Below, in pieces: positions 26,522 to 59,914 of a stretch of DNA of 64,000 bases (positions are counted from its first letter, which is position 1; each line of letters starts with the position of its first letter). Location: the IMG/VR virus record IMGVR_UViG_3300020172_001601, positions 248,001-312,000 of that record; one strand, written 5' to 3'. The notes beneath the pieces are model-generated. The model had not been told where the DNA came from. It was given only the letters and a program-made list of their open reading frames with translations, and made no database searches. Position numbers and translations under genes: made by a program.

Positions 26522-27076
26522 ATGACAAAGCAATACAGAGAACGCTACGGCACGCATTGGGACATTCGCACCCCGCTGGAAGTGATAGCGGTGCTTGAGA
26601 CGGCCCGGCAGAACCGCACTCGACTGCATATCAGCTTGGGTTATACCGAGCATGATGCGGTTGAATGGGAAAACTCATTGGGCGACGAGAAGAAGGCGGT
26701 CGGCCTTGACTGGCTCGAAGAGTATATGAGCTATGGCTACATTGGCCGCAGCACGGGAAGTGTGAAGATACCCCTGTTGGTTCACAATGAGCGGAGCTAT
26801 GGTGGCGGGGCGTTGCTGGACCATTGTATTGTCCGCATTCGCACGAGTCGTGGCGGGCGTGTGCTGTGGCAGCATCCGAACTATCATCACGGCAAGATCA
26901 CGATTCACCGCAAGCCGATCCCTCTGGAATATCCGGGTGGCGTGTTGACGGTGGACGTTCGCCGGAATGGGCAGGAGCAGGCAGCGTTTAAGGACATGGC
27001 ATCGGCCCGGCGTTACGTCAACAAGCTGGGATTGAAGGCCGAGATTGTAAACGCTCTGGAAGCGGCCTTGGCTTAG
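26522..27076 (+). CDS. Conserved phage hypothetical protein (GYIGRSTG..KIPL...GG family)
   Basis: Recognisable motif; stop is the motif TAG. Confidence 0.75.
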   Translation: MTKQYRERYGTHWDIRTPLEVIAVLETARQNRTRLHISLGYTEHDAVEWENSLGDEKKAVGLDWLEEYMSYGYIGRSTGSVKIPLLVHNERSYGGGALLDHCIVRIRTSRGGRVLWQHPNYHHGKITIHRKPIPLEYPGGVLTVDVRRNGQEQAAFKDMASARRYVNKLGLKAEIVNALEAALA

Positions 27077-27127
27077 GTCCAGTGTACCCTAGTGGGTGTA
27101 ACCAACAACAACACACGGAGAGATACG

Positions 27128-27331
27128 ATGGACGCTGATTTCAAAGTTTCGGTTCAAGGCAGCATTTGGTTGTTCGAGCCGGTCACTGAGACTGCGAAGA
27201 ACTTCACCGGCACTGACCTTGACGTTCAGGGTTGGCAGTGGATGGGCAAAGCCTTCGGGGTGGATGCCCGGATTGCCAATGCCTTGGTGAGTTCTCTGGA
27301 AGACGAGGGCTTCGTTTTGGAAATCACATAA
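27128..27331 (+). CDS. Hypothetical cassette protein
   Basis: GGAG RBS. Confidence 0.7.
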   Translation: MDADFKVSVQGSIWLFEPVTETAKNFTGTDLDVQGWQWMGKAFGVDARIANALVSSLEDEGFVLEIT

Positions 27332-27355
27332 GGGGATCGCTTCCTCTTGTGTGGC

Positions 27356-27502
27356 ACGGCGGTACTTTAATGGCAGAAGGCGGCTCCAAGCAAGGTTCGA
27401 GTCCTTCTTAGGCTGGAGTTCTGGAGAGTTAGCTACTCTTTGGACCTCCCCCTTTGCATGGAGTACGGGGCGGCAGTGCGGGTTCGACTCCCGCTCGCTG
27501 TG
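27356..27502 (+). ncRNA. tRNA-like RNA with expanded anticodon domain
   Basis: Acceptor ACGGCGG/TCGCTGT, D-arm CTTT-AATGGCA-GAAG, T-arm GCGGG-TTCGACT-CCCGC; ~95-nt structured middle region. Confidence 0.7.
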
Positions 27503-27561
27503 TTTTTAGGTCTGGTGTACCCTAGTGGGTGTTACGAAACTTTCCTTTTGGAGAACGAACT

Positions 27562-39490: not shown

Positions 39491-39628
39491 GGCGGCGTAG
39501 CTCAACTGGCTAGAGCAACCATCATTATCGTAGCGATTGATCGGGGGTCCACGGTCAATGCGGCCAACGTGTGTACAGCGTTGGTTTGAGAGGATGGGAA
39601 GACGGGGGTTCGATGCCCTCCGCTGTCT
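39491..39628 (+). ncRNA. tRNA-like RNA with ~70-nt insert replacing the anticodon loop
   Basis: GGCGGCG/CGCTGTC acceptor, GCTC-AACTGGCTA-GAGC D-arm, CCATC/GATGG stem, GGGGG-TTCGATG-CCCTC T-arm. Confidence 0.75.
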
Positions 39629-52775: not shown

Positions 52776-53241
52776 AATCCCAGGGCGGGACGGGATGTTT
52801 ATCGGCCCACAGGCCCAGCTTATGGCTTTTGGCGTATTCTTGTGCCTCGGCCATTTCCGGTGAATGAGAATAATCCGTATAGTGCCATGCCCAGCCTTCC
52901 TCGATCATTTCCTTGTTGATGTACCTGCCATTCAAATAGACCTTGCCGATAACTCGACCATATCGGTCTTTTTTGGTCCATTCCACTTTGACGTATTTGC
53001 CGAATATTTTCTCGCTGAGTGCTTCTTTGGCTTTGGTTCCGAATGGCTGTTTCTTTTCGGGACAGTCGATTTCGGCCAAGCGAACCTTCATTTGAGTTTT
53101 GTCAGGCTGCAATACTGTGATGGTATCGCCATCGGATATGCCTACAACATTCCCTGGGTCGGAAATAGAAAGACATATCCAAATCACTGGAATGAACGAA
53201 AGTATGGCAAGAACATAAACCGTCTTATACAGTTTGCTCAT
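52762..53241 (-). CDS. Thermonuclease (SNase family)
   Basis: DGDTI, VRLAEIDCPE, QPFG, DRYGR, GLW. Confidence 0.92.
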   Translation of the reverse strand: MSKLYKTVYVLAILSFIPVIWICLSISDPGNVVGISDGDTITVLQPDKTQMKVRLAEIDCPEKKQPFGTKAKEALSEKIFGKYVKVEWTKKDRYGRVIGKVYLNGRYINKEMIEEGWAWHYTDYSHSPEMAEAQEYAKSHKLGLWADKHPVPPWDFRKK

Positions 53242-54341
53242 TAGTTGATCCTAACGAAATCACGGCGTCCACATTGAACGACTTGCCCTGATTGCAGCAA
53301 CAATTGTTCATCAAAGACTTTGGTGCCGTCTACTTTGACGGCTCCATCTTTAAGTCTTTGTCGGGCAGCGGTTTTCGAGATATTGCAACAGGCAACTACG
53401 GCACTCAATAGCGAAGAGGCCGGTAGTGTAGGAATATCTGGAGGCAGTTCTTTGTTCTGCACGGTCTTGAGGAAGTGTTCCTGAGCCGCCTGAGCGACTT
53501 GTAGTGTGTGTAGTTGATTCACGATCTCGACGGCAAGAATCTTCTTCTTGTCCATCGGATGAATATCCTCGACTGTGAAATCTACAAATAAAGGGAACCA
53601 TTCCTGCATGACGGCATCAGGAATAGACATGACCTTCCCAAATACGTCATTAGGGTCTTCATCGAAGAAGATGCAGTTGTCCAGGCTCTTGCTCATCTTT
53701 CTGCCATCTGTGCCATTGATGATGGGCATCATGATGCAAGACTGAGGTTTCTGTCCGTTGGCTTCTTGTAGATGCCGGGCGACTTGAAAGTTAAACAATT
53801 GATCCTGCCCGCCGATTTCGATTTCAGATCGGAGGGCAACACTATCCCAGCCTTGGCAGATAGGGACCAAGAGTTCGTGCATACCAATAGATTGCTGATT
53901 GGCAATACGATCTTGGAAGGCGTTACGGCTGGTCATGTGCGAGAGTGTGAACTTTGCCACCTGTTTCATAAAGGTGGGAAGTGTCATCTGATTATGCAGC
54001 CAACCATTTTTACATATGGTCCATTTTCCTGGGGATTCTGGCCCGAAGTTATCGTTGCCAAGTATTTGCTTGATTTGCACGAAGATGGATTCGGCGTTGG
54101 CTTCAACATCATCTTCAGCCAATATTGGCCGGGTTGTATCACGACCAGAAGGGTCGCCGAGTTGGGCTGTGAAAGTTCCCAATACGATTGTGAGTTGATG
54201 CCCTTCTTGCATCATCTTTTTGGCGAGACGTAGCGGCACAAGATGCCCCAAATGCAAACGGGGGAAGGTCGGGTCGATCCCAAACTTCACCCGTTTGCAA
54301 GGGGGCAAATCGGCATTTTCAGGAAATACTTGAAAAGCCAT
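53241..54341 (-). CDS. tyrS: Tyrosyl-tRNA synthetase
   Basis: GIDPT, HLGH, GGQDQ, KMSKS and a C-terminal S4-like domain. Confidence 0.93.
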   Translation of the reverse strand: MAFQVFPENADLPPCKRVKFGIDPTFPRLHLGHLVPLRLAKKMMQEGHQLTIVLGTFTAQLGDPSGRDTTRPILAEDDVEANAESIFVQIKQILGNDNFGPESPGKWTICKNGWLHNQMTLPTFMKQVAKFTLSHMTSRNAFQDRIANQQSIGMHELLVPICQGWDSVALRSEIEIGGQDQLFNFQVARHLQEANGQKPQSCIMMPIINGTDGRKMSKSLDNCIFFDEDPNDVFGKVMSIPDAVMQEWFPLFVDFTVEDIHPMDKKKILAVEIVNQLHTLQVAQAAQEHFLKTVQNKELPPDIPTLPASSLLSAVVACCNISKTAARQRLKDGAVKVDGTKVFDEQLLLQSGQVVQCGRRDFVRIN

Positions 54342-58297: not shown

Positions 58298-59914
58298 TTA
58301 TTCGTCGTCTTCTGGTGATGGAGAACCTGAAGGAGCGGCGGGTTTGCCGCCACCACTCTTCAGCTTGTTCAGACTGTCCTTCCAACGCTGAGTTGAAAGA
58401 TTTCGTTTGACGGAATCGAACTCGCTGCCTTGTGGCGCACGTCCCAGGAACTTCGTATATTCTGGGTTGACGGTTCTTTTGCCATCAGCACCCTGCGAAT
58501 ATGGTGTCAAATCTTTGTCGTCATGAGCTAAGAAGTTATCGACTTCTGGACCGTGAGCTTTGGCCATCTGCATCCATTCACGAATCTTGCTCTTGGTCAA
58601 ACCTGTGTGTGCAGATTTCATGTCATAGAAGTCTTTAGGGTCGAACTTGTTCTTGGCTCCCCACTGATACAGCTTAACCAAATAAGCAATATCTCCAGAC
58701 TCTTGCTTGGACCAACCGCCACCAGTCAACATTTTCTTGACATCTTCTGGATCGTTATTGCGAAGAACCCAGGCCGGAGCCAACCAACGGTCGCCTCGGA
58801 AGTCTTCTGGCATTTGTTCTGGGTCAAAGTCAACACCTGGGAAAACACTATTGAGCAAACCAGTATTCTGGAATGCCTTCATGTATTTGCGAGGATCGCT
58901 ATCTGGATGTTCCAGACCGCTAAGGAATTCCTTACGAACTGTGTCCTTATCGACGCCATTCATGTCTTTGTGACGGGAGATAGATGCTTGATACTTTTCA
59001 GGAATCTTGTCGGAATTGCCATATCGTGTGACCATCTTCATATATCGCAGAGCGGTAGATGGGTCTTCTGACATGCGGGATTCCAGGTCGTCGCCAACAG
59101 CCTTAACTTCACCATTCTTCAAATGGTGAGCGCCACCGTGCGGGTCGATCAAGTCGCTATTGTCACCGTCCGCAGTCGTCAGCGGGATGTATAGTGAGTT
59201 AATCGTAAAGTCACGATTGGCTGAATCTTCTTCCACGGATGCGGCTGATTCACCCTTGTCAGGCTGAACTCGGCGGCTCTTAGAAGACTTAGAAAGGGTG
59301 GCAATAGAGAATTGTTCGCCGTTGATTTCGGCGGTTACTTCCAATTCTTTGCCTTGTTTGTCCCAGCGAGAAGCGTAGAAAATCTTGTTCTTAGTGCCTG
59401 GAGATGGAAGTTTTGCATATCTCTCGTCGCTGGCGTAGTCTCCTTCACGGGGCTTCGTTTCGGAAAACTGCGTTTCTAGCTGAGTCAGAATCATACGCAT
59501 TTCACTTGGCGTAGCATCTGTAACCAGATCGTAGTTACGAGGGGTCTTGCCCTTCAAATGGTCACGAACGGCACCACCTGTGAGGTACAATACCTTCTTT
59601 TTGAGGTTTGGCTCAACTTCACCCTTGGACTTATCAATCGTGGTGTAGCCTACTCCCACGTTCTGGGAGTCGGCAAATGCCTTGATAAGCACTCTAAGGT
59701 TAGGGTGCGTGGTTTTATTGATGGTAAACGGTGCGAATTCCTTGGAGCCTTCCTTCTTCTGCAATTTAATGCGTGAAGTGATGTTTCCGGCTCCTGGTTG
59801 ACCGCTACTACCGCTACTACCGCTGCCACCATTTCCACCGCTGGCCTCGCCTTCACTTGGCTTGGCTCCGGTTTCTTCTCTTAACTGAAAGTAACTTGCG
59901 AATAACTTTTTCAT
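58298..59914 (-). CDS. tRNA nucleotidyltransferase / poly(A) polymerase family protein
   Basis: GGAVRDHL, (N)YDLVTDA, RDFTINSL, EDP..ALR; first catalytic Asp appears to be Asn. Confidence 0.85.
   Translation of the reverse strand: MKKLFASYFQLREETGAKPSEGEASGGNGGSGSSGSSGQPGAGNITSRIKLQKKEGSKEFAPFTINKTTHPNLRVLIKAFADSQNVGVGYTTIDKSKGEVEPNLKKKVLYLTGGAVRDHLKGKTPRNYDLVTDATPSEMRMILTQLETQFSETKPREGDYASDERYAKLPSPGTKNKIFYASRWDKQGKELEVTAEINGEQFSIATLSKSSKSRRVQPDKGESAASVEEDSANRDFTINSLYIPLTTADGDNSDLIDPHGGAHHLKNGEVKAVGDDLESRMSEDPSTALRYMKMVTRYGNSDKIPEKYQASISRHKDMNGVDKDTVRKEFLSGLEHPDSDPRKYMKAFQNTGLLNSVFPGVDFDPEQMPEDFRGDRWLAPAWVLRNNDPEDVKKMLTGGGWSKQESGDIAYLVKLYQWGAKNKFDPKDFYDMKSAHTGLTKSKIREWMQMAKAHGPEVDNFLAHDDKDLTPYSQGADGKRTVNPEYTKFLGRAPQGSEFDSVKRNLSTQRWKDSLNKLKSGGGKPAAPSGSPSPEDDE

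What the first reader, a model, noticed from the sequence alone, without database searches (positions are those of the whole stretch)
27356..27502. tRNA-like RNA 1: intact elbow, anticodon arm expanded and containing a second T-loop hairpin
Seen: acceptor, D and T arms fold canonically. The ~95-nt middle contains AAGG-TTCGAGT-CCTT (a second T-arm) and a long hairpin GGAGTTCTGGAGAGT/ACTCTTTGGACCTCC. There is no encoded CCA and no clear anticodon loop. Inference: a tRNA mimic or decoy (e.g. against anticodon nucleases), an intron-containing tRNA, or a tRNA scaffold carrying a functional RNA domain. It is too short for tmRNA or a group I intron.
Basis: partly seen in the sequence, partly recalled or inferred. 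Interest (0 to 1): 0.75.

Follow-up and report, generated by a model that had tools for sequence, protein, structure and literature searches.

The report
Two-headed tRNA-like RNA in jumbo phage
A giant freshwater phage encodes a conserved 147-base RNA with a normal tRNA body whose anticodon loop is replaced by a second, rearranged tRNA-like module; it is most likely a tRNA mimic rather than a decoding tRNA, and belongs with the unexplained oversized tRNA genes of huge phages.

Summary
Window 27356-27502 (+) has a 7-bp acceptor stem with G3.U70, a D arm with GG, a canonical T arm, no encoded CCA and a U-tract after it. The middle holds a second perfect T-arm and a long hairpin.

The window is part of a 340-kb jumbo phage with 52 ordinary tRNAs and at least 9 oversized tRNA-like genes. 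The same RNA sits at the same place in two related phage lineages. Twelve base pairs change on both sides yet stay paired, against 4.4 in shuffles.

The best-supported fold is a canonical tRNA core. Its anticodon-type stem opens into a four-way junction carrying a 7-bp T-loop arm, a long capped helix and a small GG-loop hairpin. That is the arm order of a circularly permuted tRNA, as in YrlA Y RNAs.

ARAGORN's alternative, tRNA-Ala(UGC) with a 65-nt intron, fits the variation less well, and I saw no splicing signal.

Two RNA libraries hold the unspliced form. No Rfam family matches.

Most likely it is a non-decoding tRNA mimic matured by tRNA enzymes. The phage encodes Ro60, SmpB (no tmRNA found), two RNA ligases and a CCA-adding enzyme. 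The closest precedent is the "enigmatic introns" of Lak megaphage tRNAs.

The parts
27074..27099 (+). Copy of the 26-nt intergenic repeat (TAGGTCC AGTGTACCC TAGT GGGTGT) ahead of the 67-aa gene. Probable promoter or processing signal of the transcription unit that contains the RNA.
   Evidence: 48 copies, all on the + strand, in 25.6 kb, one before nearly every small gene. Promoter function is inferred.
27128..27331 (+). 67-aa gene of unknown function (P0003) directly upstream. The RNA always follows it when present.
   Evidence: 32 homologues; no Pfam or PHROG match.
27330..27348 (+). Leader hairpin: AAGGGG / 7-nt loop / CCUCUU, between the stop codon and the RNA.
   Evidence: Read from the sequence. 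Kept in relatives as AAGGG(G)/(C)CCCUU with loop UUAGCUG.
27356..27362 (+). Acceptor stem, 5' strand; G3 of the G3.U70 pair is at 27358.
   Evidence: invariant in all variants.
27365..27379 (+). D arm: 4-bp stem, loop AAUGGCA with G18 G19.
   Evidence: C-G becomes G.U in the relative.
27380..27387 (+). G26 plus the 5' strand of the anticodon-type stem (helix 3), GCGGCUCC.
   Evidence: RNAalifold consensus. Pairs with 27467-27474; C-G to U-A compensatory; 95% of cells paired.
27388..27409 (+). Second T arm (T'): 7-bp stem with one bulged C and the canonical T-loop UUCGAGU.
   Evidence: The outer pair A-U becomes C-G in the relative; the rest is invariant (20 of 22 nt identical).
27410..27453 (+). 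Hairpin 2: a long capped helix (AGG/CCU base, GGAG/CUCC, then a 10-bp stem) with the conserved loop UAGCU.
   Evidence: 8 pairs change on both sides. 27416 G>A with 27448 C>U is compensatory in a third lineage. The stem is only 48% identical, yet the loop is 100% identical.
27455..27465 (+). Hairpin 3: UGC / AUGGA / GUA, a small GG-loop hairpin in the D-arm position of the inner module. It contains the 'UGC anticodon' of ARAGORN's alternative reading.
   Evidence: The polymorphism 27462 A>U, seen in 3 of 4 lineages, adds a fourth pair here and breaks the alternative stem.
27467..27474 (+). 3' strand of helix 3 (GGGGCGGC). It is followed by a short variable loop ending in G46 and U48 (27475-27477).
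27478..27494 (+). T arm of the outer tRNA body.
   Evidence: C-G to U-A compensatory.
27495..27507 (+). Acceptor 3' strand, discriminator G (27502) and a U5 tract. No CCA is encoded.
   Evidence: An RNA-library contig ends at 27506.

Best explanation
**What it is.** The locus is a gene for a stable, structured, non-decoding tRNA-like RNA.

**Outer part.** It is a normal tRNA body: acceptor stem with G3.U70, D arm, G26, anticodon-type stem, short variable loop and T arm.

**Inner part.** Where the anticodon loop should be, the stem opens into a four-way junction with three arms:
- a 7-bp arm ending in a canonical T-loop;
- a long capped helix;
- a small hairpin with a GG loop.

This arm order is that of a circularly permuted tRNA, the topology of the tRNA-like module of YrlA Y RNAs. 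The molecule therefore looks like two tRNA-like heads joined through one shared stem.

**Shown here.** The sequence features, their conservation, the compensatory changes, synteny, and presence of the unspliced form in RNA libraries.

**Inferred.**
- It is co-transcribed with the upstream 67-aa gene from the repeated intergenic signal.
- Transcription ends at the U-tract.
- The 5' end is cut by RNase P.
- CCA is added by the host's or the phage's own CCA-adding enzyme.
- The T' loop docks on the GG loop to form a second elbow.
- The insert is kept, so the RNA cannot decode.
- It acts by offering tRNA-like surfaces to tRNA-binding proteins. The phage's own Ro60 orthologue (Y-RNA-like role) is the leading candidate partner. 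Host tRNA-directed enzymes or defences are the alternative.
For: **Structure and conservation**
- The RNA is conserved at the same place in two further lineages.
- 12 pairs change on both sides against 4.4 in shuffles and 1-3 in slid controls; 96.6% of cells are paired.
- The unbiased RNAalifold consensus gives the four-way junction and a canonical core with G26 and a short variable loop.
- The T' arm has a compensatory A-U to C-G change and an otherwise invariant sequence. The hairpin 2 stem is rewritten by compensatory changes while its loop is invariant.
- The common 27462 A>U allele strengthens hairpin 3 and breaks ARAGORN's anticodon stem.

**Not a known RNA family or a standard tRNA**
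- No known RNA family fits. Standard tRNA finders reject it.
- The phage already has three ordinary tRNA-Ala genes.

**Context**
- The RNA lies outside the tRNA cluster, in an array of small genes without Pfam or PHROG function.
- RNA-library contigs carry the insert, and no joints were seen.
- The genome encodes Ro60 and a CCA-adding enzyme.
- The genome holds at least 9 oversized tRNA-like genes with elaborated arms.
Against: - Only 3-4 closely related variants exist, and nearly all compensatory changes come from one lineage, so the statistics are weak.
- The two alternative stems differ by 2 kcal/mol or less, and the molecule may switch between them.
- The 7-nt stretch UUUGCAU, a perfect tRNA-Ala(UGC) loop, is invariant and matches the G3.U70 alanine identity. 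That is what an interrupted tRNA-Ala would show.
- Mature ends, CCA addition, stability and any protein partner are untested.
- The RNA contigs could come from DNA in the libraries, and standard RNA-seq misses small mature tRNAs.
- The Ro60 gene is about 170 kb away. The YrlA model does not match, and the YrlA motif GNCGAA(N)G is absent.
- The second elbow is inferred from sequence only.
Confidence: 0.5

Rival explanations
1. Interrupted tRNA-Ala(UGC) gene. The 65 nt at 27388-27452 are an intervening sequence at the 5' edge of the anticodon loop. They would be removed by an unknown protein-dependent cut, and the ends joined by the phage RNA ligases, giving a working alanine tRNA (a 'pro-tRNA').
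For: - With introns allowed, ARAGORN calls tRNA-Ala(tgc), and it calls the insert-free sequence tRNA-Ala in all three variants.
- G3.U70 and the loop UUUGCAU (U33, UGC, A37) are both alanine-type and invariant.
- Both ends of the insert are conserved while its middle varies.
- ARAGORN places an insert at the same 31/32 boundary in other tRNA-like genes of this phage.
- The phage encodes Rnl1-type and Rnl2-type RNA ligases.
- Lak megaphage tRNAs carry conserved 'introns' that contain T-arm hairpins.
Against: - The anticodon stem has a U.U mismatch in 3 of 4 lineages.
- This frame needs 3 nt instead of 1 between the D and anticodon stems, and a 13-nt variable loop without a conserved stem.
- There is no bulge-helix-bulge motif, no group I core and no Rfam ribozyme match.
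- The phage has no EndA and no RtcB. The host is a bacterium, because the phage encodes SmpB, which in the control genomes rang only in bacteria.
- No joint was seen in RNA libraries, and no insert-free allele was found.
- Three normal tRNA-Ala genes are already present.
Confidence: 0.15
2. A purely cis-acting end element. The tRNA-like fold plus U-tract would terminate the transcript of the 67-aa gene, or mark it for RNase P cutting (tRNA punctuation), with no function of its own in trans.
For: - It always directly follows the P0003 gene and precedes a U5 tract and the next repeat copy.
- RNA-library contigs join the gene's 3' end to the RNA.
- Many relatives manage without it.
Against: - A terminator or processing signal needs neither a second T-arm that is invariant in sequence, nor a conserved hairpin loop, nor a four-way junction kept by compensatory changes.
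- A similar RNA at 39491-39628 stands alone, directly behind its own repeat copy with no gene in front.
Confidence: 0.12
3. A decaying tRNA pseudogene or recombination scar: a tRNA gene into which a piece carrying another tRNA's T-arm was inserted, with no present function.
For: - The inner T-arm 15-mer is identical to the T-arm of a different tRNA-like gene at the equivalent place in other relatives (L045).
- The inner T-arm and the bases after it also equal the T-arm and the first bases of the acceptor 3' strand of an unrelated phage tRNA.
- The RNA is absent from many relatives.
Against: - Compensatory changes are present in five helices.
- The core tertiary positions are intact: U8, A14, G18 G19, G53-C61, and A15 with U48.
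- Some segments are invariant beside a rewritten stem.
- The frame that is open in the window is closed in the relative by a C-to-G change that creates TAG, so this is not coding-level conservation (read from the alignment).
Confidence: 0.06
4. A minimal tmRNA-like partner of the phage SmpB. It would be charged with alanine through G3.U70 and enter stalled ribosomes.
For: - The phage encodes SmpB at 191.7 bits, but no tmRNA is found by ARAGORN or Rfam in the 340 kb held.
- RNA 1 is the only oversized tRNA-like gene here with G3.U70 (my reading of the sequences).
- In the window a short frame, UAG|GCU ... UAG, runs up hairpin 2 and ends in its loop, as tag frames do in tmRNA helix 5.
Against: - That frame is not conserved. 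It gives 6 codons in the window, and in the relative a different frame of 10 codons with a different peptide.
- There are no pseudoknots, and a full D arm is present.
- 147 nt is far below tmRNA size, and no tmRNA model matches.
- The genome record is only 69% complete, so a normal tmRNA may lie in the missing part.
Confidence: 0.04

Closest known systems
'Enigmatic introns' of Lak megaphage tRNA genes (Devoto et al. 2019, PMC6784885, Supplementary Table 6)
   Same: - Oversized tRNA genes in huge phages.
- An insert of about 80-115 nt inside the anticodon arm.
- Highly conserved between relatives, and no Rfam match.
- The insert contains a hairpin plus a canonical T-loop arm.
- The mechanism is unknown.
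   Different: - Lak inserts lie 3' of the anticodon. Each holds a nested tRNA-like element with its own 7-bp acceptor stem, ending at the 3' exon. Insert-free alleles exist.
- Here the inner module has no open acceptor, its arms are in permuted order, and the best fold leaves no anticodon loop. No insert-free allele was found.
YrlA-type bacterial and phage Y RNAs, partners of Ro60/Rsr (Chen et al. 2014, PMC4201824; Rfam RF02553)
   Same: - A tRNA-like module in permuted order: closing stem, T arm, capped acceptor-like helix, D-like arm.
- Some members are substrates of tRNA enzymes.
- They occur in phages, and this phage encodes a Ro60 orthologue.
   Different: - The YrlA closing stem is made by the RNA's own ends and carries the GNCGAA(N)G Ro60 motif, and the gene lies next to rsr.
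- Here the closing stem is shared with a complete outer tRNA body, the motif is absent, the YrlA model does not match, and the Ro60 gene is about 170 kb away.
tmRNA tRNA-like domain
   Same: Acceptor stem with G3.U70, a canonical T arm, and a large non-tRNA domain where the anticodon arm would be. SmpB is present in the genome.
   Different: No conserved tag frame, no pseudoknots, a full D arm, about half the size, and no model match.
Phage T4 RNAC and RNAD, small stable RNAs of the tRNA gene region
   Same: Phage-encoded small RNAs linked with tRNA genes whose roles are still unknown (PMC3014915, PMC9697503).
   Different: No sequence or structural comparison could be made here. RNA 1 lies outside the phage's tRNA cluster.
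Archaeal non-canonical tRNA introns and permuted tRNA genes (review PMC4090602; details from my own knowledge)
   Same: Inserts at unusual positions of the anticodon arm, and permuted order of tRNA arms.
   Different: Those depend on a bulge-helix-bulge motif and the EndA endonuclease. Neither is present here (fold inspection), and the host is bacterial.

Membership tests
Decoding tRNA | 7-bp acceptor stem, D arm with G18 G19, T arm with a canonical T-loop, core tertiary positions | tested here: met
   U8, A14, A15 with U48, and G53-C61 were read from the sequence.
Decoding tRNA | 5-bp anticodon stem closing a 7-nt loop with U33, anticodon and purine 37 | tested here: not met
   The best-supported fold has a four-way junction instead. 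A loop appears only if 65 nt are removed.
Decoding tRNA | Recognised by tRNA models (Rfam RF00005 at 29 bits or more; ARAGORN default) | tested here: not met
Protein-spliced (archaeal/eukaryal type) intron-containing tRNA | Bulge-helix-bulge motif at the exon-intron borders | tested here: not met
   Folds show continuous helices or a junction, with no 3-4-3 motif.
Protein-spliced (archaeal/eukaryal type) intron-containing tRNA | Splicing endonuclease and RtcB-type ligase available | tested here: not met
   No EndA or RtcB in the phage record. The host is bacterial by the phage's SmpB. The record is 69% complete.
Protein-spliced (archaeal/eukaryal type) intron-containing tRNA | Spliced form present in RNA | tested here: inconclusive
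   No joints in 4 metatranscriptome runs; only unspliced contigs. Such libraries miss small tRNAs.
Group I intron in a tRNA gene | Conserved catalytic core of about 200 nt or more | tested here: not met
   The insert is 65-79 nt, with no Rfam match at E up to 10.
Huge-phage tRNA genes with 'enigmatic introns' (Lak type) | Oversized tRNA gene in a huge phage, with a conserved insert in the anticodon arm, a T-loop hairpin in the insert, and no Rfam match | tested here: met
Huge-phage tRNA genes with 'enigmatic introns' (Lak type) | Insert 3' of the anticodon, with a nested open 7-bp acceptor stem; insert-free alleles exist | tested here: not met
   The insert is 5' of the candidate loop, no nested acceptor was found, and no insert-free allele turned up in IMG/VR.
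tmRNA | G3.U70 acceptor stem plus T arm; SmpB in the genome | tested here: met
tmRNA | Conserved tag reading frame with a stop, pseudoknots, model match | tested here: not met
   The frames differ between variants (read from the alignment). ARAGORN -m and Rfam find none.
YrlA / Y RNA | Permuted tRNA-like module: stem, T arm, capped helix, D-like arm | tested here: met
   Topology only, compared with the description in PMC4201824.
YrlA / Y RNA | Match to RF02553, the GNCGAA(N)G motif, and a gene next to Ro60 | tested here: not met
   No match; the motif is absent from the sequence. Ro60 is at genome 104332-106077 and the RNA at 275356.
YrlA / Y RNA | Bound by Ro60 | not testable with these tools
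   The complex job was not folded.

The most novel reading that the evidence does not exclude
RNA 1 founds a new class of 'two-headed' tRNA mimics. It has one open, tRNA-processed and possibly alanine-charged head, and one capped, permuted YrlA-like head, joined through a shared anticodon-type stem. It would work with the phage's own Ro60 or SmpB to redirect host RNA surveillance or ribosome rescue during infection.
Probability: 0.15. Interest if true: 0.85.

Novelty: new variant of a known kind. Interest (0 to 1): 0.62.

Why it matters
Huge phages carry many oversized tRNA genes. They have been called intron-containing for want of a better word, and none has a known mechanism.

This example gives a concrete, testable structure: a canonical tRNA body whose anticodon loop is replaced by a second, permuted tRNA-like module, supported by compensatory changes.

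If it is right, some of these "introns" are not introns but built-in functional domains, and phages make tRNA mimics of a design not described before.

The same genome holds Ro60, SmpB without a detected tmRNA, two RNA ligases, a CCA-adding enzyme and at least nine such RNAs. That makes it a good system for asking how phages use tRNA-shaped RNAs.

Tried and rejected
**Searches for more homologues**
- Blastn of the region against GenBank phages found no match.
- An exact-motif scan of IMG/VR returned one unrelated tRNA.
- Pattern scans of IMG/VR and JGI metagenomes returned only the one relative, plus tandem ordinary tRNAs as false hits.
- A scan for an insert-free allele found none.
- A covariance model of RNA 1 over 229 kb of relatives and over the whole genome found only the known copies and ordinary tRNAs.

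**Structural models tested**
- An extended helix pairing GCAAGG with CUUUGC, which would hide the 'anticodon', is 7-8 kcal/mol better by nearest-neighbour energy than the frame-1 fold in which the T' arm is forced and UUUGCAU is left unpaired. I rejected it as the conserved fold because the A-U to C-G compensatory pair supports the T' arm.
- The frame-2 fold that contains the T' arm is within 2 kcal/mol of that extended-helix fold.
- Bulge-helix-bulge motif: not found.
- Tag reading frame: not conserved.

**Ro60 lead**
- The tRNA-like gene next to Ro60 gives only 17 bits, E = 0.55, against YrlA.
- In other phages Ro60 simply lies among ordinary tRNA genes, so that adjacency is weak evidence.
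- The Ro60-RNA complex prediction was not folded by the tool, so it gives no evidence either way.

**Other**
- Palindromic loops (UAGCUA here, UGUACA in RNA 2) as kissing-dimer sites are a post hoc idea and were not tested.
- Neighbouring proteins have no Pfam or PHROG function.

Full report
**Observation**

The described features are in the sequence at the stated coordinates on the + strand.
- The acceptor stem pairs 27356-27362 with 27495-27501. Its third pair is G.U.
- The D arm has a 4-bp stem and a loop with GG.
- The T arm is GCGGG / UUCGACU / CCCGC.
- The discriminator is G. A run of five U follows, and no CCA is encoded.
- The middle contains AAGG / UUCGAGU / CCUU (27392-27406) and the long hairpin 27415-27449.

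The exact T-arm core GGTTCGANTCC occurs only twice in the 64-kb window, both times in this RNA.

Default ARAGORN and Rfam at gathering scores find nothing in the window. At E up to 10 the only Rfam match is tRNA-Sec, at 16.7 bits, through the acceptor, D and T arms alone. Folding energy by itself is not remarkable (z = -0.88).

**Genome context**

The window is bases 248001-312000 of a 340,341-bp IMG/VR virus record, 47.8% G+C, estimated 69% complete. It is a jumbo phage from freshwater and sediment samples.

It has 52 ordinary tRNA genes, mostly at 70-106 kb, including two with anticodon CUA.

A scan of my own for a T arm plus a matching acceptor stem found at least nine oversized tRNA-like genes of 92-247 nt. 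Seven lie in the tRNA cluster and two in the window: RNA 1, and a second at 39491-39628.

The phage encodes:
- a Ro60 orthologue (vWA_Ro60 at 59 bits plus a weak TROVE match);
- SmpB (191.7 bits);
- Rnl2-type and Rnl1-type RNA ligases;
- a CCA-adding enzyme and a class I aminoacyl-tRNA synthetase, both inside the window.

It has no RtcB, no tRNA splicing endonuclease and no AlaRS. No tmRNA was found by ARAGORN or Rfam.

In the control genomes SmpB rang only in bacteria. I take this to mean the host is a bacterium.

RNA 1 lies in a 25.6-kb array of small + strand genes. None of the genes I scanned has a Pfam or PHROG function. Nearly every one is preceded by a 26-nt repeat, of which there are 48 copies. 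RNA 1 follows a 67-aa gene and is followed by U5 and the next repeat copy.

**Relatives**

- The RNA is present at the same place in IMG/VR contig 3300027976_002058, which is about 81% identical in the neighbouring gene.
- It is also present in a closer lineage (L033-L035).
- Two metatranscriptome contigs add a fourth variant.
- Of 32 homologues of the upstream protein, many have no RNA behind them. The RNA is therefore an accessory of one sub-clade.
- Other relatives carry a different tRNA-like gene at the equivalent spot, and it shares the 15-nt inner T-arm sequence.
- Pattern scans and a covariance model found no further members.

**Structure**

Two registers compete for the strand GCUCC (27383-27387).

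*Register 1 (ARAGORN).* GCUCC pairs with GGAGU (27460-64). This leaves UUUGCAU as an anticodon loop once 65 nt (27388-27452) are removed, giving tRNA-Ala(UGC).

*Register 2 (unbiased RNAalifold consensus).*
- GCGGCUCC pairs with GGGGCGGC (27467-74).
- This gives a canonical core: one nucleotide (G26) after the D stem and a short variable loop ending in G46 and U48.
- The stem then opens into a four-way junction with almost no unpaired linkers.
- The junction's three inner arms are:
  - a 7-bp T' arm with a canonical T-loop (27388-27409);
  - hairpin 2 (27410-27453), with loop UAGCU;
  - hairpin 3 (27455-27465), UGC / AUGGA / GUA.

On the three-sequence alignment, register 2 has 96.6% of cells paired and 12 pairs changed on both sides. 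Shuffles give 4.4 +/- 1.6 and slid controls 1-3. Register 1 has 94.3% and 11.

Three observations favour register 2:
- The stem is 95% paired in register 2 and 86% in register 1.
- C-G becomes U-A at 27381/27473.
- The A>U change at 27462, present in three of four lineages, puts a U.U mismatch in the middle of the register-1 stem but adds a pair to hairpin 3.

The two registers differ by 2 kcal/mol or less, so a switch between them cannot be excluded.

An energetically good alternative hides UGC in a helix with GCAAGG. The A-U to C-G compensatory pair in the T' arm speaks against it.

The conservation pattern is telling:
- T' arm: 20 of 22 nt identical.
- Hairpin 3 with linkers: 11 of 13.
- Hairpin 2 loop: 5 of 5.
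- Hairpin 2 as a whole: 48% identical, yet paired.
- Neighbouring coding sequence: 81%.

**Reading of the inner domain (inference)**

The order of the parts is: closing stem, T arm, long capped helix, small GG-loop hairpin, closing stem. This is the order of a circularly permuted tRNA.

The T-loop and the GG loop are the two partners that form the elbow in a tRNA, and they are the sequence-invariant parts here.

The molecule would then be two tRNA-like heads sharing one stem.

**Expression**

In two independent RNA libraries a contig runs from 27267 through the whole RNA. It reaches 27506 in one library and 27466 in the other, and it carries the insert. No joint was seen.

This shows presence in RNA libraries, not processing. 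DNA carry-over cannot be excluded, and small mature tRNAs are poorly captured.

**Known things it resembles**

- *Lak megaphage tRNA genes.* They carry conserved 80-115-nt 'enigmatic introns' with no Rfam match. From their Table S6, each contains a small hairpin and a nested tRNA-like element with a canonical T-loop arm. This is the same kind of object. Those inserts, however, lie 3' of the anticodon, have their own open acceptor stem, and have insert-free alleles.
- *YrlA Y RNAs.* They have the permuted tRNA-like module and occur in phages with Ro60. The YrlA model, its motif and gene adjacency are all not met here, and Ro60 genes of related phages simply lie among tRNA genes.
- *tmRNA.* It shares G3.U70 and the T arm only.

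**Verdict**

I am confident, at roughly 0.85, that this is a real, conserved, structured tRNA-derived RNA gene with an elaborated anticodon arm.

| Reading | Confidence |
|---|---|
| Non-decoding two-headed tRNA mimic, matured by tRNA enzymes, acting on tRNA-binding proteins (Ro60 the leading candidate) | about 0.5 |
| Interrupted tRNA-Ala | 0.15 |
| Cis-acting end element | 0.12 |
| Pseudogene | 0.06 |
| tmRNA-like SmpB partner | 0.04 |

All functional steps are inferred. The decisive data are the mature ends and size of the RNA in infected cells.

Noticed in passing
window 19415-44985 (genome 267415-292985): There are 48 + strand copies of a 26-nt repeat (TAGGTCC AGTGTACCC NNNN GGGTGT), one ahead of nearly every small gene. 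The previous gene's TAG stop is often inside it. ACCC and GGGT form an inverted repeat around a variable 3-5-nt centre. A sub-type (GGTCT ATTGTACCC) follows T-rich runs. Relatives have 34 and 50 copies. It looks like a phage-specific promoter, operator or RNA hairpin signal. No T7-type RNA polymerase was found, but that search had no positive control.
   Followed up: partly
window 39491-39628: A second oversized tRNA-like gene (138 nt) lies directly behind its own repeat copy. It has a 62-nt two-hairpin insert in the anticodon arm. It is identical in one relative. In another it has compensatory changes in the acceptor and anticodon stems, while the insert is more conserved than the tRNA body. 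The loop of its second hairpin contains the palindrome UGUACA.
   Followed up: partly
genome 70325, 70493, 70622, 70916, 74946, 101019, 106134 (outside the window): Seven more oversized tRNA-like genes (92-247 nt) lie in the tRNA cluster. They have large domains in the anticodon arm or the D loop, and one has a GNRA-capped stem in place of the anticodon loop.
   Followed up: partly
genome 245484-245903 (about 2 kb before the window): The phage encodes SmpB (191.7 bits), yet neither ARAGORN nor Rfam finds a tmRNA in the 340 kb held. The record is estimated 69% complete.
   Followed up: partly
genome 104332-106256 (locus L062): A Ro60 orthologue (vWA_Ro60 plus a weak TROVE match) is followed 56 nt later by a 123-nt tRNA-like gene with a 51-nt insert. 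This is a candidate Y RNA. The YrlA model gives only 17 bits.
   Followed up: partly
window 53241-54341 (-) and 58298-59914 (-): A class I aminoacyl-tRNA synthetase of the Trp/Tyr family (183 bits) and a CCA-adding enzyme (PolyA_pol head domain, 74 bits).
   Followed up: no
genome 182011-182084 and 182708-182778: Two tRNA genes have anticodon CUA (amber suppressors), while TAG serves as the stop codon of most genes in the repeat array. I did not test whether TAG is recoded elsewhere in the genome.
   Followed up: no
L045 2137-2400 and L048 1657-1845 (relatives): At the place where RNA 1 sits, other relatives have a shared GC-rich stretch (structure not tested). In L045 this is followed by a tRNA-like gene with an 8-bp acceptor stem, no D arm, a GUA (Tyr) anticodon loop, and a T arm whose 15 nt equal RNA 1's inner T arm.
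   Followed up: no
window 27330-27348 and the same place in L033 and L005: The leader hairpin between the stop codon and RNA 1 is conserved. In the two relatives its loop is UUAGCUG, which could form 6 pairs with the hairpin 2 loop UAGCUA. The window's own copy has lost this complementarity.
   Followed up: no
window 27267: RNA-library contigs from two different strains in two studies both begin exactly at 27267, inside the upstream gene. This is a possible RNA 5' end or processing site.
   Followed up: no
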